Shown: piece by piece, positions 1,722 through 62,731 of the stretch
Position numbering within the stretch: the stretch's first letter is position 1
Layout: every line of letters starts with the position of its first letter
Assembly (NCBI GenBank): GCA_002269645.1
Contig: NIVC01002876.1
Span: 68,605 to 132,604, forward strand
DNA from: Macrostomum lignano
Taxonomy: Eukaryota
Direction of reading: 5' to 3'
Length of the DNA: 64,000 nt
Program-made: the position numbers and the translations under genes
The notes under the pieces: generated by a model
What the model was told of the DNA's origin: nothing
Database searches by the model: none
The model's input: only the letters and a program-made list of their open reading frames with translations

Positions 1722-4253
1722 GGGAGGTGGAGGACCTGGGAGAGTGGTGGAGGATCTGGGAGGGTGGTGGAGGACCTGGGAGGGTGGTGGAGGATCTGGT
1801 AGGGTGGTGAAGGATCTGGGAGGGTGGTGAAGGATCTGGGAGGGTGGTGAAGGATCTGGGAGGGTGGTGAAGGATCTGGGAGGGTGGTGAAGGATCTGGG
1901 AGGGTGGTGAAGGATCTGGGAGGGTGGTGGAGGATCTGGGAGGGTGGTGGAGGACCTGGGAGGGTGGTGGAGGATCTGGTAGGGTGGTGAAGGATCTGGG
2001 AGGGTGGTGAAGGATCTGGGAGGGTGGTGAAGGATCTGGGAGGGTGGTGAAGGATCTGGGAGGGTGGTGAAGGATCTGGGAGGGTGGTGAAGGATCTGGT
2101 AAGGTGGTGAAGGATCTGGGGTGGTGGAGGATCTGCAAAGGTGATGGAGGATTTGGGAGGGTAGTGAAGGATCTGGTAGGGTGGTGAAGGATCTGGGAGG
2201 GTAGTGAAGGATCTGGGAGGGTGGTGGAGGATCTGCAAAGGTGATGGAGGATCTGGGAGGGTAGTGAAGGATCTGGTAGGGTGGTGAAGGATCTGGGAGG
2301 GTAGTGAAGGATCTGGTAGGGTGGTGAAGGATCTGGGAGGGTGGTGGAGGATCTGCAAAGGTGATGGAGGATCTGGGAGGGTAGTGAAGGATCTGGTAGG
2401 GTGGTGAAGGATCTGGGAGGGTGGTGGAGGATCTGCAAAGGTGATGGAGGATCTGGGAGGGTAGTGAAGGATCTGGTAGGGTGGTGAAGGATCTGGGAGG
2501 GTAGTGAAGGATCTGGGAGGGTGGTGGAGGATCTGCAAAGGTGATGGAGGATCTGGGAGGGTAGTGAAGGATCTGGTAGGGTGGTGAAGGATCTGGGAGG
2601 GTAGTGAAGGATCTGGTAGGGTGGTGAAGGATCTGGGAGGGTGGTGGAGGATCTGCAAAGGTGATGGAGGATCTGGGAGGGTAGTGAAGGATCTGGGAGG
2701 GTCGTGAAGGATCTGGTAGGGTGGTGGAGGATCTGGGAGGGTGGTGGAGGATCTGCAAAGGTGATGAAGGATCTGGGAGGGTAGTGAAGGATCTGGGAGG
2801 GTAGTGAAGGATCTGGTAGGGTCGTGAAGGATCTGGTAGGGTGGTGGAGGATCTGGGAGGGTGGTGGAGGATCTGCAAAGGTGATGGAGGATCTGGGAGG
2901 GTAGTGAAGGATCTGGTAGGGTGGTGAAGGATCTGGGAGGGTAGTGAAGGATCTGGTAGGGTGGTGAAGGATCTGGGAGGGTGGTGGAGGATCTGCAAAG
3001 GTGATGGAGGATCTGGGAGGGTAGTGAAGGATCTGGGAGGGTCGTGAAGGATCTGGTAGGGTGGTGGAGGATCTGGGAGGGTGGTGGAGGATCTGCAAAG
3101 GTGATGAAGGATCTGGGAGGGTAGTGAAGGATCTGGGAGGGTAGTGAAGGATCTGGGAGGGTCGTGAAGGATCTGGTAGGGTGGTGGAGGATCTGGGAGG
3201 GTGGTGAAGGATCTGGGAGGGTGGTGAAGGATCTGGGAGGGTGGTGAAGGATCTGGGAGGGTGGTGGAGGATCTGGGAGGGTGGTGGAGGACCTGGGAGG
3301 GTGGTGGAGGATCTGGTAGGGTGGTGAAGGATCTGGGAGGGTGGTGAAGGATCTGGGAGGGTGGTGAAGGATCTGGGAGGGTGGTGAAGGATCTGGGAGG
3401 GTGGTGAAGGATCTGGGAGGGTGGTGAAGGATCTGGTAAGGTGGTGAAGGATCTGGGGTGGTGGAGGATCTGCAAAGGTGATGGAGGATTTGGGAGGGTA
3501 GTGAAGGATCTGGTAGGGTGGTGAAGGATCTGGGAGGGTAGTGAAGGATCTGGGAGGGTGGTGGAGGATCTGCAAAGGTGATGGAGGATCTGGGAGGGTA
3601 GTGAAGGATCTGGTAGGGTGGTGAAGGATCTGGGAGGGTAGTGAAGGATCTGGTAGGGTGGTGAAGGATCTGGGAGGGTGGTGGAGGATCTGCAAAGGTG
3701 ATGGAGGATCTGGGAGGGTAGTGAAGGATCTGGGAGGGTCGTGAAGGATCTGGTAGGGTGGTGGAGGATCTGGGAGGGTGGTGGAGGATCTGCAAAGGTG
3801 ATGAAGGATCTGGGAGGGTAGTGAAGGATCTGGGAGGGTAGTGAAGGATCTGGTAGGGTCGTGAAGGATCTGGTAGGGTGGTGGAGGATCTGGGAGGGTG
3901 GTGGAGGATCTGCAAAGGTGATGGAGGATCTGGGAGGGTAGTGAAGGATCTGGGAGGGTAGTGAAGGATCTGGGAGGGTCGTGAAGGATCTGGTAGGGTG
4001 GTGGAGGATCTGGGAGGGTGGTGGAGGATCTGCAAAGGTGATGGAGGATCTGGGAGGGTAGTGAAGGATCTGGGAGGGTAGTGAAGGATCTGGTAGGGTC
4101 GTGAAGGATCTGGGAGGGTGGTGGAGGATCTGGGAGGGTGGTGGAGGATCTGCAAAGGTGATGGAGGATCTGGGAGGGTAGTGAAGGATCTGGGAGGGTA
4201 GTGAAGGATCTGGGAGGGTAGTGAAGGATCTGGGAGGGTCGTGAAGGATCTGG
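1722..4253. repeat. 20-bp G-rich minisatellite (gtggtgaaggatctgggagg and variants such as gtgatggaggatctgcaaag), about 2.5 kb, with higher-order blocks
   Basis: Exact 20-bp periodicity visible in the sequence lines; generates the 678-851 aa Pro-rich pseudo-ORFs in all three minus frames. Confidence 0.97.
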
Positions 4254-5030: not shown

Positions 5031-8000
5031 TCATAGCAGCCGCATCAAGCTGCTAGGCGTGCCGGAGGCGGCGGCGGCGTTGCCCCCGTGTCCGGCGCCG
5101 CTAGTCGCTTTGCTGCCGGTGCCGCTGGAACGCATCCGGCCTCGACTGCCAGCGGCTGCGGCAGCGGCGGCTGCAGCCTCCGCCTCCTGCTGCTGCCGCT
5201 TCCTATTGAGCAAGTAGGCCTGATAAGCGCCAGGCGGCAGCGTCGCCGAGGCGTCCGTCCGTTTAGCGGCCGATTCGCGCACCTTGTCCTGAAAGGTCGG
5301 GATCTTCTGGCGCGGCCTAGGGATCAACTGCAGCGAGCCCGGCTTGCAATGGCTCGGCACGCCGACCTCAGGCAGCGTATCGGCCGAAGCTGCCGTCTCC
5401 GCCGCCGGGGCCTCGTCGTCATCGTCTGCATCGGCGATCTCGTCCAGTGGCACATCCTCCTCAGTGTGGTGCGTCACCGCCGTGTCCGGTCGACTGGCCG
5501 ATCGCCGCTCGGCCGCCGTAGTCGGCAACCCGGCCACCGCCTCGGCCAGCAAGTCGCGCAGCCGACGCAGCAGACGTTCGCCGTCGGCCTCGCCGACAGG
5601 CATCTGCAGTGCCTGTTTGAGAATATCGGCTGCGGCGCTGACGCCGGCCCGGGCGGCCTCGTTCTCGGCTTCGGCTCTGCTGAGATCGTCCTCGGCGGCC
5701 CGTTTCAAGGACTCCTGCTCGTCCAGCTGTTGGGCCAGCGATTCGATCTCTTCGCGCTGCTCTTCTACCTATATAAATTTTAGATTATTGAGATTAGACA
5801 CTGTACTCATTGTTGCACGCGTAATTGTTTTGTCTTCCTGTTAATTTATTGACTTTTTGCAGTGCTTTTTTGCGTGATCTCTACCCCACCACTCCCTTCA
5901 TCTCTACCCCACCACTCCCTTCATCTCTACCCCACCACTCCCTTCATCTCTACCCCACCACTCCCTTCATCTCTACCCCACCACTCCCTTCATCTCTACC
6001 CCACCACTCCCTTCATCTCTACCCCACCACTCCCTTCATCTCTACCCCACCACTCCCTTCATCCCTACTACACTGCTGCCTTAATCTTTACACCACCACT
6101 CCCTTCATCTCTACCCCACCACTCCCTTCATCCCTACTACACTGCTGCCTTAATCTCTACACCACCACTCCCTTCATCCCTACTACACTGCTGCCTTAAT
6201 CTCTACACCACCACTCCCTTCATCTCTACCCCACCACTCCCTTCATCCCTACTACACTGCTGCCTTAATCTCGACACCACCACTCCCTTCATCTCTACCC
6301 CACCACTCCCTTCATCCCTACTACACTGCTGCCTTAATCTCGACACCACCACTCCCTTCATCTCTACCCCACCACTCCCTTCATCCCTACTACACTACTG
6401 CCTTCATCTCTACTCCATCATTCCCTTTATCTCTACTCCACCACTCCCTTCATCTCTACTCCACCATTCCCTTCATCTCTACTCCACCATTCCCTTCATC
6501 TCTAATCCACCATTCCCTTCATCTCTACTCCACCACTCCCTTCATCTCTACTCCATCATTCCCTTCGTCTCTACTCCACCACTCCCTGTATCTCTACTCT
6601 ACCACTCCCTTCATCTATCTGTCATACATCACTACCTGTGCATTCCTAATCAGAAGAATTCTCCCCCTCCGCACTTGAATTGCCCGGAAACAAGCAGCAA
6701 CGAAGACTCAGAAAGACAAACAAGAAGCCCCGTAACCGCACCTGAACGCGCAGGTTTTCGCTCTCCCGTTCCATGGCTTCCATTTCGGCCTCGCGTCGCT
6801 TGAACTCGTCAACAAGCAGGTCGAGCTCCTTCCGTTTCTGGCGCAGCATCAGTATGATGCGCTGGTGGCAGGCAAACTTAGTGGCCGACTCTTTCTGGCC
6901 GCGCTCCAGCTCCGCTATGCGACGGCGCTGCTCGCGAAGGCGCTTACGAATCTCCGCGTTCTCCTCCATCAGCTCCACCTGATCACGGGTTGGTTGTATA
7001 ATCTGTATTGTCTCTAACAAATCACAATAGGCTTAATTTAGGTTTAAAAATAGAAATTAATAGCAATACACATAGCACCTTCAACATTGCACATTCAACA
7101 AGCTCGCCAATGCTGTACGCAGGCACGCACTCATACACACGCTCACGCAGGGTGTACAACAGCTCTATCTATTCGTCAGACATGTACACTCTCTTGGGGG
7201 GCTGGCCCTCAAGGGCACGACAACCCATCGGCCAATTTTTGTGCACACGAGCCCCAAATGAACGCGTTTGCGCACGGAATCGAACCACGGGCTCGTGACG
7301 CGAGAGTCAGACCCGTTTACCTCTGAGCTGCTCCTCCCCCAATACATCAATCATTTGAAATTTAATTTAAAAAGTTGCATATTTCATAGAGCTGCTAGCC
7401 TATTACAGCTTCATTTTGCACTCGCTTACGGTGCTTGTCTAGAGACATACTCAGCCGTGAACTAATAATAATAACTGATTACACCTGCACTGACGGGCAG
7501 ATTTGCAACTGGCAGCTCAGCCGCAGCTATTAATTGCGCAGCGCATCTGAAGGCTGCGTACCGATGTTCAGTCCAAGGATTGGGGGGTCGTCTCCATACA
7601 CAGTCTCAACTACCCCAGCTAATGCTGGCACCCATTTTACAGCTGGGTGAACTGACCCACTAACTTGCTCACCTGTTTCTCAGACATCTTGAACATCTGC
7701 GATTGTATAGACACATTCTCTCGAATAGTTCGCTTAGTAGTTTCGGCCATTTGTTTGTTAGAAACTTTGCGAAAATCCGCCGCCACGTGGTTAACTCGGG
7801 TCACCATGTCCTTTTTAAGCCGGTCTCTGTCCAGCTGGCGGGGTTAAACAAACAATCGTAGAATAAAATCACAAATTTAAATGGAAAATTTGACATAAAA
7901 AGTAACAAAAAAATCAGTGATAATTTCCTACCAGATTTTTAGCGTGAATCCTCTGCTTAGCAGCCTCGTGATCCTCCAGCATCTTGTTAAACTCCTCAGT

Positions 8001-11216: not shown

Positions 11217-13718
11217 ATGGCTGACAGTGACGCGCGTAAGTGGCTGCTCTGCTTCTTTTGCGTACCCATTTCTGTCATAGTTTTCTTCTTTCAGTTCTTT
11301 TCAGTTCGTTCATTTCTAACTAATTTCTTTTGCTGCTAGTGATGATTGTGATGATACTTTTTTACATTAACGAACTTCAACGAACCACGGTCAACTTGTC
11401 ATAGAGTTACGAAACAACACCTCCTATTCAACACAGAACTGAAGGCAGTATTCTCTTATTTTGATCGGGACGGCACTGGCAAGCTGGATGTTAACGAGAT
11501 TCAAGAGGTGCTTAACGCACTCGGACAGTGCATGACGCCAGACGAAATCAAGGAAATTATGCAGAAGGAGGACATTAATTGTAAGCTGAATTTATCAACT
11601 AATCTAGCACGATTTTGTCTGCCTTATAAACAATAAATTAAAAACCCACAGCTGACGGAGCAATGGACATCAAGGAGTTCATTTCGTTCTTCAAAAAATA
11701 TGGCAAAGAAGCTAATAAAATAAGTCGGGAGATTCGCGACGCCTTCAAGGTAACGCTTTTATTCTTCTGTCAAATTGCTTAATAAAACGTGCCCATTGGC
11801 ACGTTGGCAGCAAGTTTCAAAATAATCGAATTTTAAGGACGTCAAGATACGAGTATCAGCGATTCTTTCCGAAAATTTGGACTTTCAAATACGCGATCTT
11901 TTTAATTTTTCGAGTTTAAAAAATTTAAACCAACGGTTTCCCGATCGTGCAAGTTGTCAATCATAGTACGCTCGTTTTTTTCTCTTTATCATTAGATTAA
12001 CCGCCCTTCGTAACTTTTATGAAAAAAGCTTGATATTTTGTCTTGAAGACATTGGACAAAGTGCTTTGAATTCCGTATGCCTTGAAATATGCTAGTACTT
12101 TATACAGCCGTTCTATTGATAGTCTTAATTCTATTAATCCACGTCTCACTACAGAAATTCGACAAGCAAGGTCGCGGCTACCTGACCCAGGCCGACTTGG
12201 AGAAGATTCTGACCCAGACTGGCGCATTTCCATTCAGCAAGGAGGAGGCCGAGATGTGCTTTAAAGCATTCGACACCAACAAGGACGGCAAGATGGACTA
12301 CGAAGGTAATAAATAATACGGATCGAACTTATGTTGTCAAACTAGGAAGGGTCTTCAGATAGTTTAAGATATTTCAAGTCCTTAGTATAACAAGAGTTAT
12401 ACCCCTCTAGTGGTGTCCCTCCGGTGTTAAACCCCTCTAGTGGTATGTCCCTCCAGCATTATACCCATCTAGTGGTATGTCCCTCCAGCATTATACCCAT
12501 CTAGTGGTATGTCCCTCCAGCATTATACCCATCTAGTGGTATGTCCCTCCAGCATTATACCCATCTAGTGGTATGTCCCTCCAGCATTATACCCATCTAG
12601 TGGTATGTCCCTCCAGCATTATACCCATCTAGTGGTATGTCCCTCCAGCATTATACCCATCTAGTGGTATGTCCCTCCAGCATTATACCCATCTAGTGGT
12701 ATGTCCCTCCAGCATTATACCCATCTAGTGGTATGTCCCTCCAGCATTATACCCATCTAGTGGTATGTCCCTCCAGCATTATACCCATCTAGTGGTATGT
12801 CCCTCCAGCATTATACCCATCTAGTGGTATGTCCCTCCAGCATTATACCCATCTAGTGGTATGTCCCTCCAGCATTATACCCATCTAGTGGTATGTCCCT
12901 CCAGCATTATACCCATCTAGTGGTATGTCCCTCCAGCATTATACCCATCTAGTGGTATGTCCCTCCAGCATTATACCCATCTAGTGGTATGTCCCTCCAG
13001 CATTATACCCATCTAGTGGTGTGTACCTCCAGCATTATACCCATCTAGTGGTGTGTACCTCCGGTGTTATACCCCTCTAGTGGTGTGTCCCTCCGGTGTT
13101 ATACCCCTCCAGTGTTATGCCCCTCCAGCATTATACCCCTCTAGTGGTATGTCCCTCCGGTGTTAAACCCCTCTAGTGGTATGTACCTCCGCTGTTATAT
13201 CCCTCTAGTGGTATGTCCCTCTGGTGTTATACCCATCTAGTGGTATGTCCCTCCGGTGTTATACCCCTCTAGTGGTATGTACCTCCGGTGTTATACCCCT
13301 CTAGTGGTATGTCCCTCTGGTGTTACACCCCTCTAGTGGTATGTCCCTCCGGTGTTATACCCCTCTAGTGGTATGTACCTCCGGTGTTAAACCCCTCTAG
13401 TGGTATGTCCCTCTGGTGTTATACCCTCTAGTGGTATGTCCCTCCGGTGTTATACCCCTCTAGTGGTATGTCCCTCCGGTGTTATACCCCTCTAGTGGTA
13501 TGTACCTCCAGTGTTATGCCCCTCCAGTGTTATACTCATTCAGTGTTATACCCCAGCAGTGATATATCCTCCAGTTTTTCAGTGAGTAATGCTTTTTTAA
13601 AGAAATTCTAATAATTCTTTATACCCACAACCCAAACTATATTGTTGCAGAGTTTGCCAACTTCCTGTGTGCCATCTGCCCGAGCTTTGACGATCTGGAG
13701 AAGCTGAACAATAAGTGA
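11217..13718 (+). CDS. Calmodulin-like EF-hand calcium-binding protein; 5 exons: 11217-11235, 11437-11580, 11652-11749, 12155-12305, 13651-13718 (159 aa)
   Basis: GT-AG introns with consistent phases (1,1,0,1). EF loops DRDGTGKLDVNE, DINSDGAMDIKE, DKQGRGYLTQAD and DTNKDGKMDYEE. Too divergent to be canonical calmodulin. Confidence 0.9.
12400..13560. repeat. 32-bp minisatellite (tagtggtatgtccctccagcattatacccatc) in intron 4 of the calmodulin-like gene
   Basis: Homogeneous core of about 20 identical units with diverged units at both edges. Confidence 0.97.
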
Positions 13719-14199: not shown

Positions 14200-14430
<231 letters not shown>

Positions 14431-14510
14431 GATATTCATAAGGCAGTTTGAAACTGCAAACCACGCACTCGGAAGATATTGAAGGTTACCAGTTGTCGAA
14501 AGTTCGAAAA

Positions 14511-14551
14511 AAACCGATATTTCGGCCCAGACTGGGCCTTCGTCAGGGTTT
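14511..14551 (-). ncRNA. Minimal type I hammerhead ribozyme, copy 1
   Basis: Minus strand reads AAACC-CUGACGA-A-GGCCCA guc UGGGCC-GAA-AUAU-C^GGUUU: conserved CUGANGA/GAAA core, stem II, palindromic 4-nt stem III (AUAU), AUC cleavage triplet, stem I AAACC/GGUUU. Confidence 0.85.
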
Positions 14552-16386
14552 ATTTATTCGGGTTTAAAAACAAATATATTGGCAGTGAAGTTATTGTAAC
14601 ATAATTTCAATATATATATATGCTACTTTTGGGGGTGCACTGAGCAGTGTTGAGTAAAGATGTGTACGTATAATTAGTTAAAAACGTGAGTTGAAGCACG
14701 CTGATTGGTTAAAGATTGGCAGCTTAAAGCCTTGCACAAAAAATATTAAAGATGTTAGGTGCTATAGAAAAACAGATTTAGAGCGTAGAAGTGTATGAAT
14801 AAGCATCTTGAAAAGTTCAACAAATAAGTTATTTACGCCCGTAGAATTGAGAACAAATATTAAATTAAAACAGAGCACTGAGAACTTTTCAAAAAGAAGT
14901 GCAAGTAAATAGATGTTATTACATAAACAGTAAATAAATTGAGTCGCCAGGCAGGCCACTAGTTGCAGTTGGCGGCGTCTGGTCACAGATCGCCGCCTGC
15001 ACAGCCCCTGGTCACAGGCGACTGGGCACTGCAGATCAGTTGAGGCTAGATTATCAGTAGTAGTAGCACTAGTAGTTGCAGTAGTAGCTCGTAGTAGTAG
15101 TAATGGAAGTAGTAGTAGTACAAGTATTAGTAGAGTAGTAGTAGAGCAGTCGTAGGCGTAGTCGTAGTAGAGACGTACTGGTAAGCAGTTATTTGAAGTA
15201 GCCAGGCAGGCCACTAGTCGCAGTTGGCGGCGTCTGGTCACAGATCGCCGCCTGCACAGCCCCTGGTCACAGGCGACTGGGCACTGCAGATCAGTTGAGG
15301 CTAGATTATCAGTAGTAGTAGCACTAGTAGTTGCAGTAGTAGCTCGTAGTAGTAGTAATGGAAGTAGTAGTAGTACAAGTATTAGTAGAGTAGTAGTAGA
15401 GCAGTCGTAGGCGTAGTCGTAGTAGAGACGTACTGGTAAGCAGTTATTTGAAGTAGCCAGGCAGGCCACTAGTCGCAGTTGGCGGCGTCTGGTCACAGAT
15501 CGCCGCCTGCACAGCCCCTGGTCACAGGCGACTGGGCACTGCAGATCAGTTGAGGCTAGATTATCAGTAGTAGTAGCACTAGTAGTTGCAGTAGTAGCTC
15601 GTAGTAGTAGTAATGGAAGTAGTAGTAGTACAAGTATTAGTAGAGTAGTAGTAGAGCAGTCGTAGGCGTAGTCGTAGTAGAGACGTACTGGTAAGCAGTT
15701 ATTTGAAGTAGCCAGGCAGGCCACTAGTCGCAGTTGGCGGCGTCTGGTCACAGATCGCCGCCTGCACAGCCCCTGGTCACAGGCGACTGGGCACTGCAGA
15801 TCAGTTGAGGCTAGATTATCAGTAGTAGTAGCACTAGTAGTTGCAGTAGTAGCTCGTAGTAGTAGTAATGGAAGTAGTAGTAGTACAAGTATTAGTAGAG
15901 TAGTAGTAGAGCAGTCGTAGGCGTAGTCGTAGTAGAGACGTACTGGTAAGCAGTTATTTGAAGTAGCCAGGCAGGCCACTAGTCGCAGTTGGCGGCGTCT
16001 GGTCACAGATCGCCGCCTGCACAGCCCCTGGTCACAGGCGACTGGGCACTGCGGATCAGTTGAAGCTAGATTTTCAGTAGTAGTAGCACTAGTAGTTGCA
16101 GTAGTAGTAGTAGTGGTAGTAGAGTAGTAGTAGTACAGTCGTAGTCGTAGCCGTAGTCGTAGTAGTGTCGTGCGTCTTAAATATTCAGCTGCAGAAATAG
16201 TACTCTTGCTTATCCCAAGTAGATTTTTGGCGGAGAATAGCTCGTATACGAAGATATTTTGTTGACAAACATGGCGAGCCTCAATAATAGTCCGGTCCTG
16301 GGTACAGATATTCATAAGGCAGTTTGAAACTGCAAACCACGCACTCGGAAGATATTGAAGGTTACCAGTTGTCGAATGTTCGAAAA

Positions 16387-16427
16387 AAACCGATATTTCG
16401 GCCCAGACTGGGCCTTCGTCAGGGTTT
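16387..16427 (-). ncRNA. Minimal type I hammerhead ribozyme, copy 2
   Basis: Identical to copy 1, offset 1876 bp. Confidence 0.85.
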
Positions 16428-18262
16428 ATTTATTCGGGTTTAAAAACAAATATATTGGCAGTGAAGTTATTGTAACATAATTTCAATATATATATATGCT
16501 ACTTTTGGGGGTGCACTGAGCAGTGTTGAGTAAAGATGTGTACGTATAATTAGTTAAAAACGTGAGTTGAAGCACGCTGATTGGTTAAAGATTGGCAGCT
16601 TAAAGCCTTGCACAAAAAATATTAAAGATGTTAGGTGCTATAGAAAAACAGATTTAGAGCGTAGAAGTGTATGAATAAGCATCTTGAAAAGTTCAACAAA
16701 TAAGTTATTTACGCCCGTAGAATTGAGAACAAATATTAAATTAAAACAGAGCACTGAGAACTTTTCAAAAAGAAGTGCAAGTAAATAGATGTTATTACAT
16801 AAACAGTAAATAAATTGAGTCGCCAGGCAGGCCACTAGTTGCAGTTGGCGGCGTCTGGTCACAGATCGCCGCCTGCACAGCCCCTGGTCACAGGCGACTG
16901 GGCACTGCAGATCAGTTGAGGCTAGATTATCAGTAGTAGTAGCACTAGTAGTTGCAGTAGTAGCTCGTAGTAGTAGTAATGGAAGTAGTAGTAGTACAAG
17001 TATTAGTAGAGTAGTAGTAGAGCAGTCGTAGGCGTAGTCGTAGTAGAGACGTACTGGTAAGCAGTTATTTGAAGTAGCCAGGCAGGCCACTAGTCGCAGT
17101 TGGCGGCGTCTGGTCACAGATCGCCGCCTGCACAGCCCCTGGTCACAGGCGACTGGGCACTGCAGATCAGTTGAGGCTAGATTATCAGTAGTAGTAGCAC
17201 TAGTAGTTGCAGTAGTAGCTCGTAGTAGTAGTAATGGAAGTAGTAGTAGTACAAGTATTAGTAGAGTAGTAGTAGAGCAGTCGTAGGCGTAGTCGTAGTA
17301 GAGACGTACTGGTAAGCAGTTATTTGAAGTAGCCAGGCAGGCCACTAGTCGCAGTTGGCGGCGTCTGGTCACAGATCGCCGCCTGCACAGCCCCTGGTCA
17401 CAGGCGACTGGGCACTGCAGATCAGTTGAGGCTAGATTATCAGTAGTAGTAGCACTAGTAGTTGCAGTAGTAGCTCGTAGTAGTAGTAATGGAAGTAGTA
17501 GTAGTACAAGTATTAGTAGAGTAGTAGTAGAGCAGTCGTAGGCGTAGTCGTAGTAGAGACGTACTGGTAAGCAGTTATTTGAAGTAGCCAGGCAGGCCAC
17601 TAGTCGCAGTTGGCGGCGTCTGGTCACAGATCGCCGCCTGCACAGCCCCTGGTCACAGGCGACTGGGCACTGCAGATCAGTTGAGGCTAGATTATCAGTA
17701 GTAGTAGCACTAGTAGTTGCAGTAGTAGCTCGTAGTAGTAGTAATGGAAGTAGTAGTAGTACAAGTATTAGTAGAGTAGTAGTAGAGCAGTCGTAGGCGT
17801 AGTCGTAGTAGAGACGTACTGGTAAGCAGTTATTTGAAGTAGCCAGGCAGGCCACTAGTCGCAGTTGGCGGCGTCTGGTCACAGATCGCCGCCTGCACAG
17901 CCCCTGGTCACAGGCGACTGGGCACTGCGGATCAGTTGAAGCTAGATTTTCAGTAGTAGTAGCACTAGTAGTTGCAGTAGTAGTAGTAGTGGTAGTAGAG
18001 TAGTAGTAGTACAGTCGTAGTCGTAGCCGTAGTCGTAGTAGTGTCGTGCGTCTTAAATATTCAGCTGCAGAAATAGTACTCTTGCTTATCCCAAGTAGAT
18101 TTTTGGCGGAGAATAGCTCGTATACGAAGATATTTTGTTGACAAACATGGCGAGCCTCAATAATAGTCCGGTCCTGGGTACAGATATTCATAAGGCAGTT
18201 TGAAACTGCAAACCACGCACTCGGAAGATATTGAAGGTTACCAGTTGTCGAATGTTCGAAAA

Positions 18263-18303
18263 AAACCGATATTTCGGCCCAGACTGGGCCTTCGTCAGGG
18301 TTT
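18263..18303 (-). ncRNA. Minimal type I hammerhead ribozyme, copy 3
   Basis: Identical to copy 1, offset 3752 bp. Confidence 0.85.
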
Positions 18304-19645
18304 ATTTATTCGGGTTTAAAAACAAATATATTGGCAGTGAAGTTATTGTAACATAATTTCAATATATATATATGCTACTTTTGGGGGTGCACTGAGCAGT
18401 GTTGAGTAAAGATGTGTACGTATAATTAGTTAAAAACGTGAGTTGAAGCACGCTGATTGGTTAAAGATTGGCAGCTTAAAGCCTTGCACAAAAAATATTA
18501 AAGATGTTAGGTGCTATAGAAAAACAGATTTAGAGCGTAGAAGTGTATGAATAAGCATCTTGAAAAGTTCAACAAATAAGTTATTTACGCCCGTAGAATT
18601 GAGAACAAATATTAAATTAAAACAGAGCACTGAGAACTTTTCAAAAAGAAGTGCAAGTAAATAGATGTTATTACATAAACAGTAAATAAATTGAGTCGCC
18701 AGGCAGGCCACTAGTTGCAGTTGGCGGCGTCTGGTCACAGATCGCCGCCTGCACAGCCCCTGGTCACAGGCGACTGGGCACTGCAGATCAGTTGAGGCTA
18801 GATTATCAGTAGTAGTAGCACTAGTAGTTGCAGTAGTAGCTCGTAGTAGTAGTAATGGAAGTAGTAGTAGTACAAGTATTAGTAGAGTAGTAGTAGAGCA
18901 GTCGTAGGCGTAGTCGTAGTAGAGACGTACTGGTAAGCAGTTATTTGAAGTAGCCAGGCAGGCCACTAGTCGCAGTTGGCGGCGTCTGGTCACAGATCGC
19001 CGCCTGCACAGCCCCTGGTCACAGGCGACTGGGCACTGCAGATCAGTTGAGGCTAGATTATCAGTAGTAGTAGCACTAGTAGTTGCAGTAGTAGCTCGTA
19101 GTAGTAGTAATGGAAGTAGTAGTAGTACAAGTATTAGTAGAGTAGTAGTAGAGCAGTCGTAGGCGTAGTCGTAGTAGAGACGTACTGGTAAGCAGTTATT
19201 TGAAGTAGCCAGGCAGGCCACTAGTCGCAGTTGGCGGCGTCTGGTCACAGATCGCCGCCTGCACAGCCCCTGGTCACAGGCGACTGGGCACTGCGGATCA
19301 GTTGAAGCTAGATTTTCAGTAGTAGTAGCACTAGTAGTTGCAGTAGTAGTAGTAGTGGTAGTAGAGTAGTAGTAGTACAGTCGTAGTCGTAGCCGTAGTC
19401 GTAGTAGTGTCGTGCGTCTTAAATATTCAGCTGCAGAAATAGTACTCTTGCTTATCCCAAGTAGATTTTTGGCGGAGAATAGCTCGTATACGAAGATATT
19501 TTGTTGACAAACATGGCGAGCCTCAATAATAGTCCGGTCCTGGGTACAGATATTCATAAGGCAGTTTGAAACTGCAAACCACGCACTCGGAAGATATTGA
19601 AGGTTACCAGTTGTCGAATGTTCGAAAAAAACGTGGTTTGCAGTT

Positions 19646-22216
<2,571 letters not shown>

Positions 22217-22659
22217 GGCACACAGAGGGGACACACTCACACAGACACAATCAATCTAGCACAGACTGATGAATTCAATTGGACTAAATTAAACTAATAA
22301 ATTGCACTTTAATAAAATATTCTGCGGTAAGCAGGCTGGGGAAACAGCGATTCAGTGGTTAAAAAGTATATAAATGGTATTGGTGAATTACTTGTGCTTC
22401 ACAGCAAGCAAGTGCAAGTAAATCTGATTTAATTGAGGCATGCAGCATAGGATCATGACAAAACCGGATGGTGAAGGGGTTACAAGTTCACTTCGCTATT
22501 GCTGATCTTGAGCTCACTGAGAATATGAAAAGAAGACAACCTAATATCGAGAATATGGATGACTACATCTCCGAGACCTTTACATCATAAATTATCTCAT
22601 GCTCTCTCTCTCTAGATGACTAAAGGATCACGGAACCTCGAGATAATTCCACGATGTTC

Positions 22660-23244: not shown

Positions 23245-24603
23245 TCAATCAGTTTTGACAGCAGCTGGTCGCAGCAGGCGCAGCATTAGCAACACTATCA
23301 TGACAGCGTGACAGCAGTGCAACAGGCCGCTACTAAAGCTAGTTGACGGATAGGTGTTCCAGCACAGCTCTATACAGCCCAGCAACAGTAGCTGAGGAGC
23401 GGCGGGCAGCCTGCACCGCCAGACCAGATAGTGCAAACTGTGAAAATACCAAACGTAGAACTGATAATGCAGCGATCTGGCGCAGACAACGCCGATAAAG
23501 TTACTAACAAACAGTACGCAGACAATGTCTTCAACTGCTGGCAAAACTGTCTCTCCTTGCTGTTTCCCAGCCGCTTGTAGAGGATGGAAACGAATTAATC
23601 GACTAATAGAGAGCCGGCGAGTTCTAGCGTAGGCCAATAGAAAGACCAACAGCAGGGTCAGGTGGACAGTCAGCAGGCCAGCGTGGAACAGCCGATTATG
23701 AAAGACAGCCTCGGGCAGGAAGCGCCAGTTCACCGTCCATTTAAACAGGAATTGTCTGGAGAATTCGAAAGCCCGGCCAAGGTAGGCGGACGTGCTGTAG
23801 GTGAGAAACGGGGCGCCTAGCAACAGTTGGATCAGGGCGCAGACAGACAGCTGGCCGGCCACCTCCCAGACGTGATGACGCATGAGCAGCAGCAGCAGGA
23901 GGCCCGGCGCGTACAGCAGGATGTTCATCTTAACTGACACGGCCAAGCTGTACAGCACGCAGCCAACGGACCAGCGATCGTATAGGAAGCACAGCAGAGC
24001 GGCGTGAAAGAATAGCATAGCAACTGGATCGTTGAATAGACGCAACAGGTGGATAGAATGCACTCGATAGGATAGGCAGCACATGAACACTAACAGGTAG
24101 GGCGGTACCCGGCCAATACGGCGGTAAATTAGCAGAACAATAGCAGTATTGGTCAGGTAGATAGCAGCGAATGCGCACTGAGCAATGAGTATCTGACTGC
24201 CCCGATCTGTCAAATAGTACAGAGCCGAATAAAAGTACACGAATCCGGCCGGATACACGAGAGGCCCGGTGTCGCCGCTAAGCAGACGATAGTCTCTAGT
24301 ACCATTTAGGAAGCCTTCAACTTCTTGCATATAGGCTCGCCAATCGATTTCTGTGTACGGCACGCGCCAGACGATAAGGGCGCAGACAAGAATTTCGGCT
24401 AGTAGCAGCGGTACCGCAACCAAACCGGTGGCGCCCGGTTCCGTTAGCAGATAGCGCGCCCATTCTACTGGGGTACGCGAGGCCAGCTTTTGTCGGCAAG
24501 AATTTATTAGAGAGCGAAGGCTGCCGCTAGCAGACGAGGAAGCTGACGCCGCCGATTTCGGCTTGGCTGGTCGACGGGGCGGCGGAGCCATCGGATGCGG
24601 CAT
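23245..24603 (-). CDS. ALG3: Dol-P-Man:Man5GlcNAc2-PP-dolichol alpha-1,3-mannosyltransferase, intronless CDS (start at ATG 24603 or 24591)
   Basis: Motifs VPYTEIDWRAYMQEVEGFLNG, GDTGPLVYPAGFVY, RVHSIHLLRLFND, SLAVSVKMN, FLFKWTVNWRF, SLHYQFYVWYFHSL and ELCWNTYPST. The track's extension to 24705 runs into the 23-bp repeat. Confidence 0.95.
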   Translation of the reverse strand: MPHPMAPPPRRPAKPKSAASASSSASGSLRSLINSCRQKLASRTPVEWARYLLTEPGATGLVAVPLLLAEILVCALIVWRVPYTEIDWRAYMQEVEGFLNGTRDYRLLSGDTGPLVYPAGFVYFYSALYYLTDRGSQILIAQCAFAAIYLTNTAIVLLIYRRIGRVPPYLLVFMCCLSYRVHSIHLLRLFNDPVAMLFFHAALLCFLYDRWSVGCVLYSLAVSVKMNILLYAPGLLLLLLMRHHVWEVAGQLSVCALIQLLLGAPFLTYSTSAYLGRAFEFSRQFLFKWTVNWRFLPEAVFHNRLFHAGLLTVHLTLLLVFLLAYARTRRLSISRLIRFHPLQAAGKQQGETVLPAVEDIVCVLFVSNFIGVVCARSLHYQFYVWYFHSLHYLVWRCRLPAAPQLLLLGCIELCWNTYPSTSFSSGLLHCCHAVMIVLLMLRLLRPAAVKTD

Positions 24604-24699
24604 GAAGATGGGTGAAGTGAGGCTGCGATTAATAAGCGTCATCACGATTCTAAGAGACAATTTAAAGTGATTCCGGAGACAATCTGGGGCGATTCTAAG

Positions 24700-25143
24700 A
24701 GGCAACTCAAGTCGATTCTAAGAGGCAACTCAAGTCGATTCTAAGAGGCAACTCAAGTCGATTCTAAGAGGCAACTGAAGTCGATTCTAAGAGGCAATTC
24801 AAGTCGATTCTAAGAGGCAACTCAAGGCGATTCTAAGAGGCAATTCAAGGCGATTCTAAGCGGCAACTGAAGGCGGCTCTAAGAGGCAACTCAAGGCGAT
24901 TCTAAGAGGCAACTCAAGGCGATTCTAAGAGGCAATTCAAGGCGATTCTAAGCGGCAACTGAAGGCGGTTCTAAGAGGCAATTCAAGGCGATTCTAAGAG
25001 GCAACTCAAGGCGATTCTAAGAGGCAATTCAAGGCGATTCTAAGCGGCAACTGAAGGCGGTTCTAAGAGGCAACTCAAGTCGATTCTAAGAGGCAACTGA
25101 AGGCGGTTCTAAGAGGCAGTTTAAGGCGATTTTAAGAGGCAAT
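24700..25143. repeat. 23-bp minisatellite (gattctaagaggcaactcaagtc/ggc) between MORN3 and ALG3
   Basis: Direct periodicity. Confidence 0.95.
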
Positions 25144-28831: not shown

Positions 28832-31800
28832 TTAATCCCACAGTCTAATAGTGCCGTCCCAACCGGAAGTGACAACTTTGCTAGTCTCGTACGGCAGCCA
28901 GGCAGATGACACGCACGGTCCGTCGTGCGCCTTCCACCTGGTGACAATGCGCTGCTTCTTCCAATCCCAGATGAACAATTTGCCGTCTCCGTCGCCAGAC
29001 ATTAGAAATTTCATATCGGGCGAGAAATCGATTGAGCAGGCATAGCCGGCGGCCATGTGGCCTTTGAAGCATTTCTTCTTCATTTGTTTCATGCCTTTGT
29101 GCACGTTGAACACGACAATCTGATTGTCTAGCGATTGGCACACCAGCCATTTGCCGTTCGGGCTCAGCGTAACAGCCGGCATGGAATGCATGGACGGGTC
29201 GCTGATATTGTTATAATCAACCGGGATGTCCCATTCCCACATGCGCAGGCTCTTATCGTCCGAGGTGGATACGAATCGTTTATTATCGTCAATAAACGTG
29301 ATGGTATTCACTGAGCCAAGGTGCCTGTCGTATTCTTGCGTCACCTCGCCGGTTCGAGTGTCCATGCAGATGATCTTTTTATTATTGCAGCCGGCTAGGA
29401 AAAAGTTGGCCTTATCCGGGTCCGGGTTGAACTTGACGCAGTAGGGCACGTGACCGAGGTCCCAGCGGTCCACGCACTTGCCCGTCTCCGTGTCCCACAG
29501 CTTCACGTAGCGATCGTAGGAGGCCGACAGAAATTGGCTGCCGTCGTGACTGCAAGCGGGGAGATGGAGTTTGTTTGATATAATATAATCCTAGCTATAC
29601 TGATGCTTATTTCGGGACACTAGCGACACTGTTTCGGGACACTAGCGACACTGTTTCGGGACACTAGCGACACTGTTTCGGGACACTAGCGACACTGTTT
29701 CGGGACACTAGCGACACTGTTTCGGGACACTAGCGACACTGTTTCGGGACACTAGCGACACTGTTTCGGTACACTAGCGACACTGTTTCGGGACACTAGC
29801 GACACTGTTTCGGTACACTAGCGACACTGTTTCGGGTAAATAGCGACACTGTTTCGGGACACTAGCGACACTGTTTCGGGGAAATAGCGACACTGTTTCG
29901 GGACACTAGCGACACTGTTTCGGGGAAATAGCGACACTGTTTCGGGACACTAGCGACACTGCTTCGGGGAAATAGCGACACTGTTTCGGGGAAATAACGA
30001 CACTGTTTCGGGGAAATAACGACACTGTTTCGGGGAAATAGCAAAACTGTTTCGGGGAAATAACGACACTGTTTCGGGACACTAGCGACACTGTTTCGGG
30101 GAAATAACGACACTGTTTCGGGACACTAGCGACACTGTTTCGGGGAAATAGCGACACTGCTTCGGGGAAATAGCGACACTGTTTCGGGACACTAGCGACA
30201 CTGTTTCGGGTAAATAGCGACACTGTTTCGGGACACTAGCGACACTGTTTCGGGGAAATAGCGACACTGTTTCGGGACACTAGCGACACTGTTTCGGGGA
30301 AATAACGACACTGTTTCGGGGAAATAGCAAAACTGTTTCGGGGAAATAACGACACTGTTTCGGGGAAATAACGACACTGTTTCGGGGAAATAGCGACACT
30401 GTTTCGGGGAAATAGCAAAACTGTTTCGGGGAAATAACGACACTGTTTCGGGACACTAGCGACACTGTTTCGGGGAAATAACGACACTGTTTCGGGACAC
30501 TAGCGACACTGCTTCGGGGAAATAGCGACACTGTTTCGGGGAAATAACGACACTGTTTCGGGACACTAGCGACACTGCTTCGGGGAAATAGCGACACTGT
30601 TTCGGGACACTAGCGACACTGTTTCGGGGAAATAACGACACTGTTTCGGGGAAATAGCGACACTGTTTCGGGGAAATAACGACACTGTTTCGGGGAAATA
30701 GCGACACTGTTTCGGGGAAATAGCAAAACTGTTTCGGGGAAATAGCAAAACTGTTTCGGGGTAATAGCGGGGTTATCCCGGGGTTATCAGGCAACAAATT
30801 TTTGATAATTTTTGCAACAAAAATAATGCAACGCAAAACCCACCTGAAGCAGGCATCCCGAACTGCCTGCCGATGTCCGGAATAGGTGCGCAATAGCCGG
30901 CGTTCCTTGTACAGTTCGAACAGCTTGAGCTTGGAGTCCATGCCGGCCGATAGCAGCAGGTGGCCAGTGCGCGGGAACAGGCGGATAGCAGCCACGCCGC
31001 GATCATGCGCTTTAACCCATTCATGCAGCTGCCGTTTCGGTAGGAAGCACTTCCGGGGCCCCTCGTCTGACCGGAAATTAACGCCGGCATCGCGCGGCGG
31101 CTCCAGCAAGCTTCGGCCCTGATAGTCGGCCATAGCCGGCACGTGCATAGTGGTCTTCTCCTCCACCGGGGTCTCCTCCGGCCGGCGCTTGTTCTTGGCC
31201 TTCTTAGCCAGGTACTCCTGCATGTACTCGCGATCCTCCTCTGGCGGCGCCGCTACCAACGCTTCGTCAACGAATTTACCCCACGGTCCCAGGTAGCCTT
31301 CAATATCGGCCGGATCATTGTTAGTTCGCCGTTTCCGATTGTCGCCCGGCCGCTTCTTGACGCCTTCAAAGACTGTGACAGCGCCGCTGGCGGCGCCTCT
31401 GGCCGCGTTGCCAACCATAGCGTCGGCGTCGATGCTGGGATCCGCGGCGTAGCCGTAACTATGAAAAGTTCGACGCTGCGTCTCGAAATGAAAATCGTTC
31501 ATGTGGCTGGGCTCAACAAAGCCGGTTAGGGTGTTTTTTGGCGCGGTCGACTTGCCCGGCACCTGCGGCCCGAGCACAGGAGCGAACAGCTCGTCAGCCT
31601 TGGGATTGTAGGCCAGCTCCTTGCACGTGGGATCTAGTGCCGGTCGGGAATCCCTAGTGGCCTGTTCGATTCCGCTAACGTCGGGCGTGAGATCGAGCTT
31701 GGGCACTAGCGAGCTGTGCGTCACTGGCCGGGTTGATAGAGGCGGCTGTGATGGTTGCTGCTGCAGCGGCTGAGCCTGGGGCGCAGAATCCGGTTCGCCT

Positions 31801-31844
31801 TCGTCAGAGGAAGCCTCATAGGAGACTAATGATGCGGCTGCCAT
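28832..31844 (-). CDS. CDC40: Pre-mRNA-processing factor 17 (WD40); exons 30844-31844 and 28832-29549 (572 aa)
   Basis: ELAYNPKADELFAP, MNDFHFETQRRTFHSYGYAADPS, CFLPKRQLHEW, HLLLSAGMDSKLKLF, (intron) SHDGSQFLSASYDRYVKLWDTETG, QEYDRHLGSVNTITF, DNNISDPSMHSMPAV, FKGHMAAGYAC, TSGWDGTIRLWD. The phase-2 GT-AG intron restores frame. Confidence 0.95.
29610..30770. repeat. 22-bp minisatellite (cgggacactagcgacactgttt / cggggaaatagcgacactgttt) filling the CDC40 intron
   Basis: Direct periodicity with two alternating variants. Confidence 0.97.
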
Positions 31845-35619: not shown

Positions 35620-35662
<43 letters not shown>

Positions 35663-54570: not shown

Positions 54571-54784
54571 TTCCATTCAGGAAGCACTTCCTGCGCCCTG
54601 GAAGTGGCGTCCAATTGAAGCGCACCAGCGAACCCCTTGAACGTTCATCTTGCATTTAGTGAGCTGAGATTGGCTGGCGAGACGGGGCGGGGCTGATGGA
54701 GTAGCATCTTCATATATTATACGAGCAAGATTAATAATACTCTCCGTGGAAATCCAATTGTTCGCTAAACTCGATCAAGTCGCA

Positions 54785-62731
<7,947 letters not shown>

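What the first reader, a model, noticed from the sequence alone, without database searches (positions are those of the whole stretch)
19548..19645. Array 5' end sits at the ribozyme cleavage site and carries a short fold-back inversion
Seen: the terminal partial unit stops at ...ttcgaaaaaaac (19632), 1-2 nt from the predicted cleavage position (equivalent to 14515/14516). It is followed by gtggtttgcagtt (19633-19645), the reverse complement of 19570-19582 inside the same unit, and then the GATA tract resumes. Inference: the integrated cDNA was copied from a ribozyme-cleaved RNA to its very 5' end and then template-switched or folded back before joining the target. This is a direct footprint that the ribozyme worked in vivo and that the array arose by retrotransposition (for example rolling around a circular template) rather than by unequal crossover alone.
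Basis: partly seen in the sequence, partly recalled or inferred. Interest (0 to 1): 0.75.

Follow-up and report, generated by a model that had tools for sequence, protein, structure and literature searches.

The report
Snap-back junction of a ribozyme retroelement
A flatworm (Macrostomum lignano) repeat that carries a small self-cutting RNA motif was copied via RNA into a GATA microsatellite; this copy starts 1-2 bases from the predicted cut site and has a short reverse-complement patch there, an interesting but single example, since the other four insertions I could examine start elsewhere.

Summary
The terminal partial unit ends at 19632, 1-2 nt short of the predicted hammerhead cleavage site. 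It is followed by a perfect 14-nt inverted copy of 19570-19583.

The window is Macrostomum lignano, contig NIVC01002876.1. The unit (1366-1876 bp, sense on the minus strand) carries a minimal Penelope-type hammerhead.

Four other loci of the same assembly give five independent insertions in all:
- All five lie in (TATC)n in one orientation.
- All five end 3' at the same base, 82-86 nt past the cleavage site.
- Their 5' ends differ.
- One has a target duplication of at least 387 bp.

This is target-primed reverse transcription of a template that spans the cleavage site, so it was multimeric or circular. The fold-back matches the "snap-back" class of 5' junction described for R2.

Only this copy begins at the cleavage site. 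Chance gives about 0.2% per event and about 1% over five. Run-off on a ribozyme-cut template is therefore the best reading but is not proven. Duplicated array-plus-tract blocks and unequal unit lengths show that DNA-level processes also shaped the arrays.

Verdict: new member of a known kind, moderate interest.

The parts
14221..14433 (.). GATA tract flanking the element's 3' end (downstream flank in element orientation). The last 4 nt, AGAT (14430-14433), are shared with the unit and could be priming microhomology.
14430..14515 (-). 3'-terminal partial unit, unit positions 1-86 (GGTTTTTTTCGAAC...CCTTATGAATATCT). Every array in five insertions ends at this same point.
14516..16391 (-). Full unit, cleavage site to cleavage site, 1876 nt, with 4.7 copies of the 255-bp subrepeat.
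16392..18267 (-). Full unit, 1876 nt. It differs from the neighbouring unit by one base in 1876 (14501 A against T).
18268..19632 (-). 5'-most unit, 1366-nt type (two 255-bp subrepeats fewer). It begins at unit position 2 or 3, so it lacks only G1 or G1-G2 after the predicted cleavage site.
14511..14551 (-). Minimal type I hammerhead: helix I AAACC/GGUUU, core CUGACGA, one unpaired A, helix II GGCCCA-GUC-UGGGCC, GAAA, UAUC^G. Cleavage is predicted between 14516 and 14515. AUAU is palindromic, which would allow a dimeric helix III.
   Evidence: architecture as in PMC4209133
16387..16427 (-). Second identical hammerhead; cleavage predicted between 16392 and 16391.
18263..18303 (-). Third identical hammerhead; cleavage predicted between 18268 and 18267.
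19570..19583 (+). Template arm of the fold-back (AACTGCAAACCACG). It overlaps the 3' arm of the palindrome GCAGTTTGAAACTGC (19561-19575).
19632..19645 (+). Snap-back tag CGTGGTTTGCAGTT, the reverse complement of 19570-19583. C19632 can belong either to the unit or to the tag (1-nt microhomology).
19646..19655 (+). Second piece of filler, ATCTATATCT. It is an inverted-orientation copy of the tract variant GATATAGAT, whose nearest copies are at 14405 and 19797.
19656..22217 (.). GATA tract upstream of the element's 5' end. Joining it to the left flank without the filler gives a 64-mer that occurs 13 times in this tract, so the empty site reconstructs cleanly.

Best explanation
The array is one insertion of a non-coding, hammerhead-bearing retroelement of Macrostomum lignano. 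The element specifically targets (GATA)n/(TATC)n microsatellites.

How it most likely works:
1. A nick in the GATA strand gives a 3'-OH ending ...GATAGAT. This pairs with AUCU at unit position 83-86 of the element RNA and primes reverse transcription (target-primed reverse transcription). This step is inferred from the constant 3' end.
2. That start point lies 86 nt downstream of a hammerhead cleavage site, and every array continues upstream across at least one intact site. The template is therefore a multimeric transcript or a circularised monomer, not a fully processed linear monomer.
3. In this copy the cDNA crossed three intact sites. It then ended 1-2 nt before the fourth, most likely because the template's 5' end had been made there by hammerhead self-cleavage (run-off). 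This step is inferred from one junction.
4. The freed cDNA 3' end (...AAAAAAAC) snapped back onto itself, with C19632 pairing to G19583. It was extended 13 nt and stopped inside a 7-bp palindrome.
5. It then picked up 9-10 nt copied from a GATA-strand variant motif and was joined to the upstream target.

The junction structure itself is shown by the sequence. Which enzyme did the snap-back (the element's reverse transcriptase or a repair polymerase) is not shown. The reverse transcriptase is presumably supplied in trans by a Penelope-like element, because the hammerhead has the Penelope-type minimal architecture. That partner was not identified.

Sub-claim confidences: target-primed retrotransposition about 0.9; snap-back about 0.8; ribozyme run-off about 0.55.
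For: - Identity and source. The window equals NIVC01002876.1 of GCA_002269645.1, 100% over 21,538 bp. The element's ORF matches M. lignano hypothetical proteins.
- Hammerhead. Core, helices I and II, an unpaired A before stem II and an AUAU palindrome in place of helix III are present. The descriptor gives 3 hits against 0 in 300 shuffles. The architecture matches the min-HHR of Penelope-like elements (PMC4209133). The HHR block is the best-conserved part against a diverged relative: 83/86, compared with 313/349 and 66/84.
- Retrotransposition. Arrays in L001, L002, L003, L005 and the window all lie in (TATC)n in the same orientation and end at ...CCTTATGAAT-ATCT|ATCT. Their 5' ends differ. 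L003 has a duplication of target DNA including 373 bp of unique sequence. L002 has a 3-nt microhomology at its 5' junction. The joined window flanks restore a normal tract.
- Snap-back. A 14-nt perfect inverted copy lies 48 nt away, with p<5e-5. The same junction class is described for R2 insertions (PMC11331408).
- Run-off. The end lies 1-2 nt from the predicted cleavage site. About 3 of 1876 positions qualify, so about 0.16% per event and about 0.8% for at least one in five.
Against: - Only 1 of 5 independent 5' ends is at the cleavage site, and none of the others has an inverted tag.
- The hammerhead is predicted only. No Rfam hit was found. There is no covariation, because copies are identical or carry a single C.A mismatch. 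Published Penelope min-HHRs cleave poorly in vitro, and no RNA-seq ends were found at the cut site of the Anolis element (PMC11167929).
- Unit lengths differ within arrays (1366/1621/1876). A single rolling circle does not predict this.
- All loci come from one PacBio-based assembly, so the junction has no independent confirmation.
- No autonomous partner was found.
Confidence: 0.55

Rival explanations
1. Coincidence. The cDNA simply stopped early, as in the other four insertions. The stop happened to fall next to the cleavage site, and the snap-back followed premature dissociation rather than run-off.
For: Four of five independent 5' ends are scattered. 5' truncation is the rule for this kind of insertion.
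Against: Only about 3-5 of 1876 positions would count, which gives roughly 1% for at least one hit in five events.
Confidence: 0.28
2. The reverse transcriptase stalled on an uncleaved template at the folded hammerhead (helix I plus the GC-rich helix II). The end marks RNA structure, not cleavage.
For: The minimum-free-energy fold forms helix I and a 6-bp GC helix II immediately upstream of the stop.
Against: The enzyme passed the same structure three times in this array and up to seven times in L003. The stop lies at the inner end of helix I, after most of it had already been unwound. Structural stops usually occur on entering a helix (established knowledge of reverse-transcriptase pausing).
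Confidence: 0.07
3. The inverted tag is not a snap-back. It is an abortive second cDNA, an inverted 5'-truncated copy as often seen next to Penelope-like elements or in L1 twin priming. It would have been primed on the other side of the break from an internal start 22 nt inside the usual 3' end.
For: Inverted 5'-truncated copies at the 5' side are a Penelope hallmark (PMC8557442), and internal alternative start sites are documented (PMC11167929). The reverse complement of the filler (AG-ATATAGAT-AACTGCAAACCACG) equals the 3' junction 14422-14465 minus the terminal 22 nt (my reading).
Against: The piece lacks the element's true 3' end (positions 64-86). The strand that would have to prime it is TATC-type and cannot end in ...ATAGAT. 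A template 48 nt away explains the 14-mer more simply.
Confidence: 0.1
4. Assembly artefact: the junction is a chimeric or mis-polished stretch of a long-read assembly in a 2.5-kb microsatellite.
For: All data come from one assembly. Homopolymer length varies at equivalent sites in other arrays: T6, T8 and T10 instead of T7.
Against: A precise 14-nt templated inversion plus a clean empty-site reconstruction is not a typical assembly error. The array is internally consistent with one SNP in 1876 nt.
Confidence: 0.03
5. A DNA-level origin only: a satellite that expanded inside the microsatellite by unequal crossover or replication slippage, with no RNA intermediate.
For: L001 and L002 each hold two array-plus-tract blocks with identical 5' junctions, and subrepeat numbers vary. 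DNA-level duplication therefore does occur here.
Against: This cannot explain the same exact 3' end, fixed orientation, different 5' truncation points and a target duplication at unlinked loci.
Confidence: 0.02

Closest known systems
Minimal type I hammerheads of Penelope-like elements (Cervera & de la Pena 2014, PMC4209133)
   Same: [quoted passage not shown] It occurs in head-to-tail repeats.
   Different: No reverse transcriptase or GIY-YIG ORF lies between the repeats. The unit is a 1.4-1.9 kb non-coding sequence with internal 255-bp subrepeats. Activity is untested.
Metazoan non-LTR retrozymes (Cervera & de la Pena 2020, PMC7229834; Li et al. 2026 bioRxiv 10.64898/2026.07.22.740005)
   Same: A non-autonomous tandem repeat with one type I hammerhead per unit, proposed to spread by reverse transcription of circular or multimeric RNA, with Penelope-like elements as the suspected helper.
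   Different: Units there are 170-400 nt; here they are 1366-1876 nt. Here there is strict microsatellite target and orientation specificity and a fixed internal 3' end 86 nt past the cleavage site. I did not find either feature described in those papers.
Snap-back 5' junctions of R2 target-primed insertions (PMC11331408)
   Same: Reverse-complemented sequence from the cDNA itself or from nearby target DNA sits between the cDNA 3' end and the upstream target. This is exactly the composition of 19632-19655.
   Different: Those were seen in engineered R2 insertions in human cells. Here it is a natural insertion of an unrelated element, and the polymerase responsible is unknown.
R2 HDV-like ribozyme defining the element's 5' end (Eickbush et al. 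2013, PMC3774820)
   Same: A self-cleaving ribozyme sets the 5' end of the RNA template, and this is reflected in the 5' junction of full-length insertions.
   Different: The R2 ribozyme is HDV-like and sits at the very 5' end of the element, and full-length copies regularly start there. Here the ribozyme is a hammerhead, it stays on the upstream fragment, and only 1 of 5 insertions starts at the site.
Microsatellite-targeting Penelope-like elements (Naiad/Chlamys, Neptune; PMC8557442)
   Same: Insertion bias for microsatellites, head-to-tail multicopy insertions including non-autonomous derivatives, and complex 5' ends.
   Different: The targets reported there are (TA)n, (CA)n and (C)n, and Naiad/Chlamys lack canonical hammerheads. 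Here the target is (GATA)n and a hammerhead is present. No 30-40 bp optional 'tail' was seen.

Membership tests
Hammerhead ribozyme, type I minimal (Penelope-type) | Conserved catalytic core C3-U4-G5-A6-N7-G8-A9 ... G12-A13-A14 ... U16.1-H17 | tested here: met
   CUGACGA ... GAAA ... UAUC^G appears three times on the minus strand. The descriptor gives 3 hits against 0 in 300 shuffles.
Hammerhead ribozyme, type I minimal (Penelope-type) | Helices I and II flank the core; helix III is absent or 1 bp with a palindromic loop (dimeric form) | tested here: met
   Helix I is AAACC/GGUUU and helix II is GGCCCA/UGGGCC with one unpaired A before it. A15.1-UA-U16.1 gives the AUAU palindrome. This compares with the description in PMC4209133.
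Hammerhead ribozyme, type I minimal (Penelope-type) | Match to curated covariance models (Rfam) | tested here: not met
   There was no hammerhead hit at gathering score or at E<=10. A motif with no helix III may simply not fit those models; I did not check whether they include minimal variants.
Hammerhead ribozyme, type I minimal (Penelope-type) | Covariation supporting the helices | tested here: inconclusive
   The 19 copies seen are identical apart from a 1-nt deletion in helix II (L003 17617) and a C.A mismatch in L005. The HHR block is the best-conserved segment.
Hammerhead ribozyme, type I minimal (Penelope-type) | Self-cleavage at the predicted site | not testable with these tools
   This needs in vitro transcription of tandem or dimeric constructs, or RNA end mapping.
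Metazoan non-LTR retrozyme / non-autonomous Penelope derivative | Head-to-tail units, each with a type I hammerhead, and no reverse transcriptase or endonuclease | tested here: met
   Arrays hold from less than one to seven units. The only ORF has no significant Pfam match and no relatives outside the element.
Metazoan non-LTR retrozyme / non-autonomous Penelope derivative | Unit size of about 170-400 nt | tested here: not met
   Units are 1366, 1621 or 1876 nt.
Metazoan non-LTR retrozyme / non-autonomous Penelope derivative | Expression as linear and circular monomer RNA | not testable with these tools
   No transcript data were available.
Metazoan non-LTR retrozyme / non-autonomous Penelope derivative | Sequence shared with the terminal repeat of an autonomous Penelope-like element in the same genome | not tested
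   The whole assembly could not be searched. Protein searches with the element's ORF found only element copies.
Target-primed (non-LTR-type) site-specific retrotransposition | Constant 3' end with variable 5' truncation | tested here: met
   The 3' end is at unit position 82-86 in all seven arrays (five independent events). The 5' ends are at about 2-3, 900, 1709, 656 and 727-equivalent.
Target-primed (non-LTR-type) site-specific retrotransposition | Target-site duplication | tested here: met
   In L003, tract plus 373 bp of unique DNA is duplicated on both sides at 100% identity. This cannot be determined where both ends lie in the microsatellite, which includes the window.
Target-primed (non-LTR-type) site-specific retrotransposition | Fixed target sequence and orientation | tested here: met
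   All five events are in (TATC)n with the element sense strand on the TATC strand.
Snap-back class of TPRT 5' junction | Reverse-complemented cDNA or nearby target sequence between the cDNA end and the upstream target | tested here: met
   There are 14 nt from the cDNA 48 nt away plus 9-10 nt of inverted tract motif. The class is defined in PMC11331408.
Ribozyme-defined 5' ends (R2-like logic) | Full-length insertions regularly begin at the cleavage site | tested here: not met
   One of five independent insertions does so.

The most novel reading that the evidence does not exclude
Minimal Penelope-type hammerheads have been poor cleavers in vitro, and for the Anolis element no in vivo RNA ends were found at the cut site. 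This junction would be a genomic fossil showing that such a hammerhead does cut in vivo and can set the 5' end of the retrotransposition template. The family as a whole would be natural, junction-level evidence that hammerhead repeats spread by target-primed reverse transcription of multimeric or circular RNA. Its features are a GATA-specific target, a fixed internal start 86 nt past the cut site, and arrays of up to seven units.
Probability: 0.4. Interest if true: 0.6.

Novelty: new member of a known kind. Interest (0 to 1): 0.45.

Why it matters
How hammerhead-bearing tandem repeats ("retrozymes") and Penelope-like elements move is still largely a model. The papers I read call target-primed copying of circular RNA likely or hypothetical (PMC7229834, the 2026 bioRxiv preprint). 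For one Penelope element, hammerhead cleavage was found dispensable in vitro and undetected in RNA-seq (PMC11167929).

This flatworm family gives unusually clean genomic evidence for the integration step:
- one target and one orientation;
- one exact 3' end that lies downstream of the cleavage site;
- 5' truncations;
- a long target duplication;
- junctions consistent with direct joins, one with an 8-nt filler, and one snap-back.

If a full census shows an excess of 5' ends at the cleavage site, it would tie ribozyme activity to the template. If not, the junction studied here is an ordinary snap-back end that fell next to the ribozyme by chance.

Tried and rejected
- Rfam scans of the window at gathering score and of the array at E<=10 found no hammerhead, only chance DicF and mir-34 matches.
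- My first motif pattern had the wrong spacer length and found nothing. I replaced it with a scripted descriptor.
- A metagenome scan for a 30-mer of the unit gave 0 hits.
- Exact look-ups of window ORFs (ALG3, hAT, MORN, and the 517-aa and 347-aa element ORFs) were not on record. The M. lignano ALG3 entry had no contig.
- I hoped to see the locus in a second assembly or an empty paralogous site through ALG3 and MORN3 homologues. The MORN3 hit turned out to be the window's own contig, so there is no independent check.
- I checked whether the roughly 87-nt interruptions in the L001 TATC tracts were solo 86-nt terminal fragments, which would have been run-off products. They are only imperfect microsatellite.
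- I first read the 380 bp between tract and array in L003 as a foreign "extra template". It is a target-site duplication.
- I considered the 517-aa ORF as a real gene and rejected it as unlikely. It has only a sub-threshold Pfam match, it stays open largely because of (ACT)n-like repeats and a 255-bp (85-codon) subrepeat, and its ATG is lost in the diverged relative.
- My recollection that the Penelope "tail" is an inverted tag was wrong. The papers describe it as a direct 30-40 bp extension.

Full report
**1. What is in the sequence**

The window carries a head-to-tail array on the + strand from about 14430-14434 to 19632. Unit starts, using the anchor ATTCATAAGG, are at 14434, 16310, 18186 and 19552.
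- The first two units are 1876 bp and differ at one base.
- The third is 1366 bp because it has two fewer copies of an internal 255-bp subrepeat.
- The fourth matches for 81 nt and stops at 19632.
- GATA microsatellite lies on both sides: 14221-14433 and 19656-22217.
- No other copy of the unit is in the window. The only outside matches are to a (TAC)n microsatellite.

**2. The ribozyme**

On the minus strand each unit has this motif:

AAACC-CUGACGA-A-GGCCCAGUCUGGGCC-GAAA-UAUC^GGUUU

This is a hammerhead core with helix I (5 bp), an unpaired A, helix II (6 bp with a 3-nt loop), and in place of helix III only A15.1-UA-U16.1.
- The minimum-free-energy fold gives helices I and II with the core open.
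- A descriptor for this arrangement hits 3 times in the window and 0 times in 300 dinucleotide-preserving shuffles.
- Rfam finds nothing even at E<=10.
- The shape is the one described for the minimal hammerheads of Penelope-like elements. [quoted passage not shown]

I number the unit from the first base after cleavage: position 1 is G and position 1876 is C17.

**3. The junction**

In this numbering the array begins at position 2, or at position 3 if C19632 belongs to the inverted arm.
- The next bases, CGTGGTTTGCAGTT (19632-19645), are a perfect reverse complement of 19570-19583, 48 nt away.
- Shuffling the 24-nt junction filler 20,000 times never gave a reverse-complement match longer than 12 nt to the 300 nt upstream.
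- The following ten bases, ATCTATATCT, are the only stretch in TATC orientation in either tract. Its first nine bases are the reverse complement of GATATAGAT, a variant motif that occurs 15 times in the tracts. The nearest copies are at 14405 and 19797.
- The filler therefore has two inverted, templated pieces, one from the element and one from the target.
- Joining the two flanks without the filler gives a 64-mer that occurs 13 times in the right-hand tract. The array plus filler is a clean insertion.

**4. Where the window comes from, and other copies**

The element's only ORF matched three Macrostomum lignano hypothetical proteins. These gave loci L001-L003 from assembly GCA_002269645.1. 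A profile-free search of the representative library added a diverged relative, L005. A MORN3 homologue led back to the window itself. L004 is 100% identical to window 37228-15691, so the window is the last 64 kb of contig NIVC01002876.1 and record coordinate = window + 68604. All data therefore come from one assembly.

**5. What the other copies show**

Every array lies in (TATC)n with the element's sense strand on the TATC strand. Every array ends at ...CCTTATGAAT-ATCT followed by ATCTATCT. That is unit position 82-86, with 4 nt of ambiguity because ATCT matches the target.

The 5' ends differ:

| Locus | 5' end | Notes |
|---|---|---|
| Window | unit position 2-3 | snap-back tag and inverted tract motif |
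| L001 | inside a 255-bp subrepeat (about position 900) | same junction and same irregular upstream flank occur twice, so a local duplication |
| L002 | about position 1709 | CTA microhomology; also occurs twice |
| L003 | inside a subrepeat (about position 656) | 8-nt filler; see target duplication below |
| L005 | in the repeat region (about position 727-equivalent) | diverged relative, about 83% identical |

- In L003 the tract plus 373 bp of unique DNA upstream of the array is 100% identical to the sequence downstream of it. That is a target-site duplication of at least 387 bp.
- That makes five independent events, and only the window's starts at the cleavage site.
- None of the other junctions has an inverted tag.
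- Internal unit-to-unit joins are seamless (ATATC|GGTTTTTTT). The only differences are in the length of the T run, which in a PacBio-based assembly may be error.

**6. Mechanism**

A constant 3' end, variable 5' truncation, a target duplication and fixed target and orientation are the signature of target-primed reverse transcription. This is established knowledge of non-LTR and Penelope-like elements (see PMC11167929 and PMC8557442).

The fixed start lies 86 nt downstream of a cleavage site, and every array then crosses at least one intact site. The template therefore cannot be a fully processed linear monomer. It must be a multimeric transcript or a religated circle. I cannot tell these two apart.
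- Seamless joins fit both.
- Unit lengths differ within arrays (for example 1620, 1621, 1876, 1620, 1621 and 1619 in L003, and 1366, 1876 and 1876 in the window). This argues against one circle copied faithfully, unless the enzyme slips among the 255-bp subrepeats or the arrays changed after insertion.
- The duplicated array-plus-tract blocks in L001 and L002 show that DNA-level duplication happens at these loci.

**7. The 5' end in the window**

Three readings remain.

(a) Run-off on a template whose 5' end was made by the hammerhead.
- About 3 of 1876 positions would count. That gives about 0.16% per event and about 0.8% for at least one in five. With some discount for hindsight this still favours (a).

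(b) Chance truncation.

(c) Stalling at the folded ribozyme on an uncleaved template.
- This is weakened by the three to seven successful passages of the same structure.
- It is also weakened by the stop lying at the inner end of helix I rather than at its entry.

I put (a) at roughly 0.55-0.6. The missing 1-2 nt are compatible with run-off followed by joining through the C/G microhomology.

**8. The fold-back**

The + strand is the cDNA.
1. Its 3' end ...AAAAAAAC can pair C19632 with G19583.
2. It can then be extended along itself from 19582 to 19570, which gives exactly GTGGTTTGCAGTT.
3. Copying stops two bases past the centre of the palindrome GCAGTTTGAAACTGC (19561-19575).
4. Nine to ten bases copied from a GATA-strand motif follow, and then the upstream target.

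An abortive inverted second copy, as in Penelope-type inverted copies or L1 twin priming, is a weaker alternative. The piece lacks the element's real 3' end, and the strand that would have to prime it has the wrong polarity.

**9. Comparison with known systems**

The hammerhead fits the Penelope min-HHR description. The element works like a non-LTR retrozyme or a non-autonomous Penelope derivative (PMC7229834; bioRxiv 10.64898/2026.07.22.740005).
- It differs in its much larger unit, its strict GATA specificity and its fixed internal 3' end.
- Microsatellite targeting and multicopy head-to-tail insertions of non-autonomous derivatives are known for Penelope-like elements (PMC8557442).
- A ribozyme setting an element's 5' end is known for R2 (PMC3774820). 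There it is the rule; here it is 1 of 5.
- I found no paper on hammerheads or Penelope-like repeats in Macrostomum.
- Against the diverged relative L005, the hammerhead block is the best-conserved part: 83/86, compared with 313/349 upstream and 66/84 in the terminal segment. This is modest evidence that the motif matters to the family.

**10. Verdict**

Retrotransposition and a snap-back are well supported.
- "Direct footprint of in vivo cleavage" rests on one junction that is unlikely by chance but is not matched in the other four events.
- "Rather than unequal crossover" is overstated.
- The element is a new member of a known kind. A whole-assembly census of 5' ends would settle the main question.

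Noticed in passing
window 14762-16315, 16638-18191, 18514-19557 (minus strand): A 517-aa (347-aa in the short unit) ATG-started ORF runs on the element's sense strand from unit position 79 through the 255-bp (85-codon) subrepeats. It is annotated as a hypothetical protein in M. lignano (PAA94865.1, PAA86640.1, PAA62220.1). It has only a sub-threshold Pfam match, no relatives outside the element, and its ATG is lost in the diverged copy L005, so it is probably not a gene.
   Followed up: partly
L003 6069-6441 and 18558-18930 (NIVC01001962.1): There is a long target-site duplication. The TATC tract plus 373 bp of unique DNA is present at 100% identity on both sides of a seven-unit array, with an 8-nt filler (TATGGCTA) at the 5' junction. 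The second-strand break was therefore hundreds of bases from the first.
   Followed up: yes
L001 2458-3520 and 5833-12996; L002 9760-11340 and 12064-13899: Two arrays per locus share the identical 5' truncation point and, in L001, the same irregular upstream flank. They differ in unit or subrepeat number. This looks like local duplication of array plus microsatellite (unequal exchange between tracts), or an assembly duplication.
   Followed up: partly
L001 7514-8740: A 1227-bp foreign insertion sits inside one unit, flanked by a 12-bp direct duplication (ACTGCTTACCAG) and with similar inverted ends (GTTGGGCA...). It is probably a DNA transposon or MITE.
   Followed up: no
L005 10005-11151 (NIVC01001007.1): This is a diverged relative of the element (about 83% identical) with the same target, orientation and 3' end. 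The hammerhead block is nearly unchanged, with one C.A mismatch in helix II. The hairpin GCAGUUU-N-AAACUGC near the 3' end is kept with a U.G pair.
   Followed up: partly
window 23245-24705 (minus strand): An uninterrupted ORF encodes a complete ALG3 mannosyltransferase (Pfam E=1e-140). No gene is called there in the assembly's annotation, and it is only 81% identical to the M. lignano ALG3 in UniRef. It may be an unannotated paralogue or a retrocopy.
   Followed up: partly
window 41560-43074 (plus strand): A 504-aa ORF has a BED zinc finger and a Hermes-type DNA-binding domain, so it is a hAT-family transposase. It is not on record as a called gene.
   Followed up: no
whole window, e.g. 1722-4253, 5877-6616, 12397-13533, 29610-30769, 35504-37172, 48263-49003, 50430-51206, 53788-54585: More than thirty separate minisatellite arrays (units of 10-60 bp, 0.3-2.5 kb each) lie between and inside genes. 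One of 22-bp units lies between the two WD40 ORFs (28832-29506 and 30456-31844), which belong to one annotated gene. This is an unusually dense tandem-repeat landscape.
   Followed up: no
window 55712-56108: A perfectly pure (TAC)132 microsatellite (100% matches). It is the only sequence outside the array that aligns with the unit, through the unit's AGT/ACT-rich subrepeat.
   Followed up: no
window 19656-22217: The GATA tract has a higher-order structure. A variant block (GATGGATATAGATACATAGGTATATAGATAGAT) recurs at irregular intervals, and an exact 64-mer recurs 13 times. The element's 3' end abuts one such block.
   Followed up: partly
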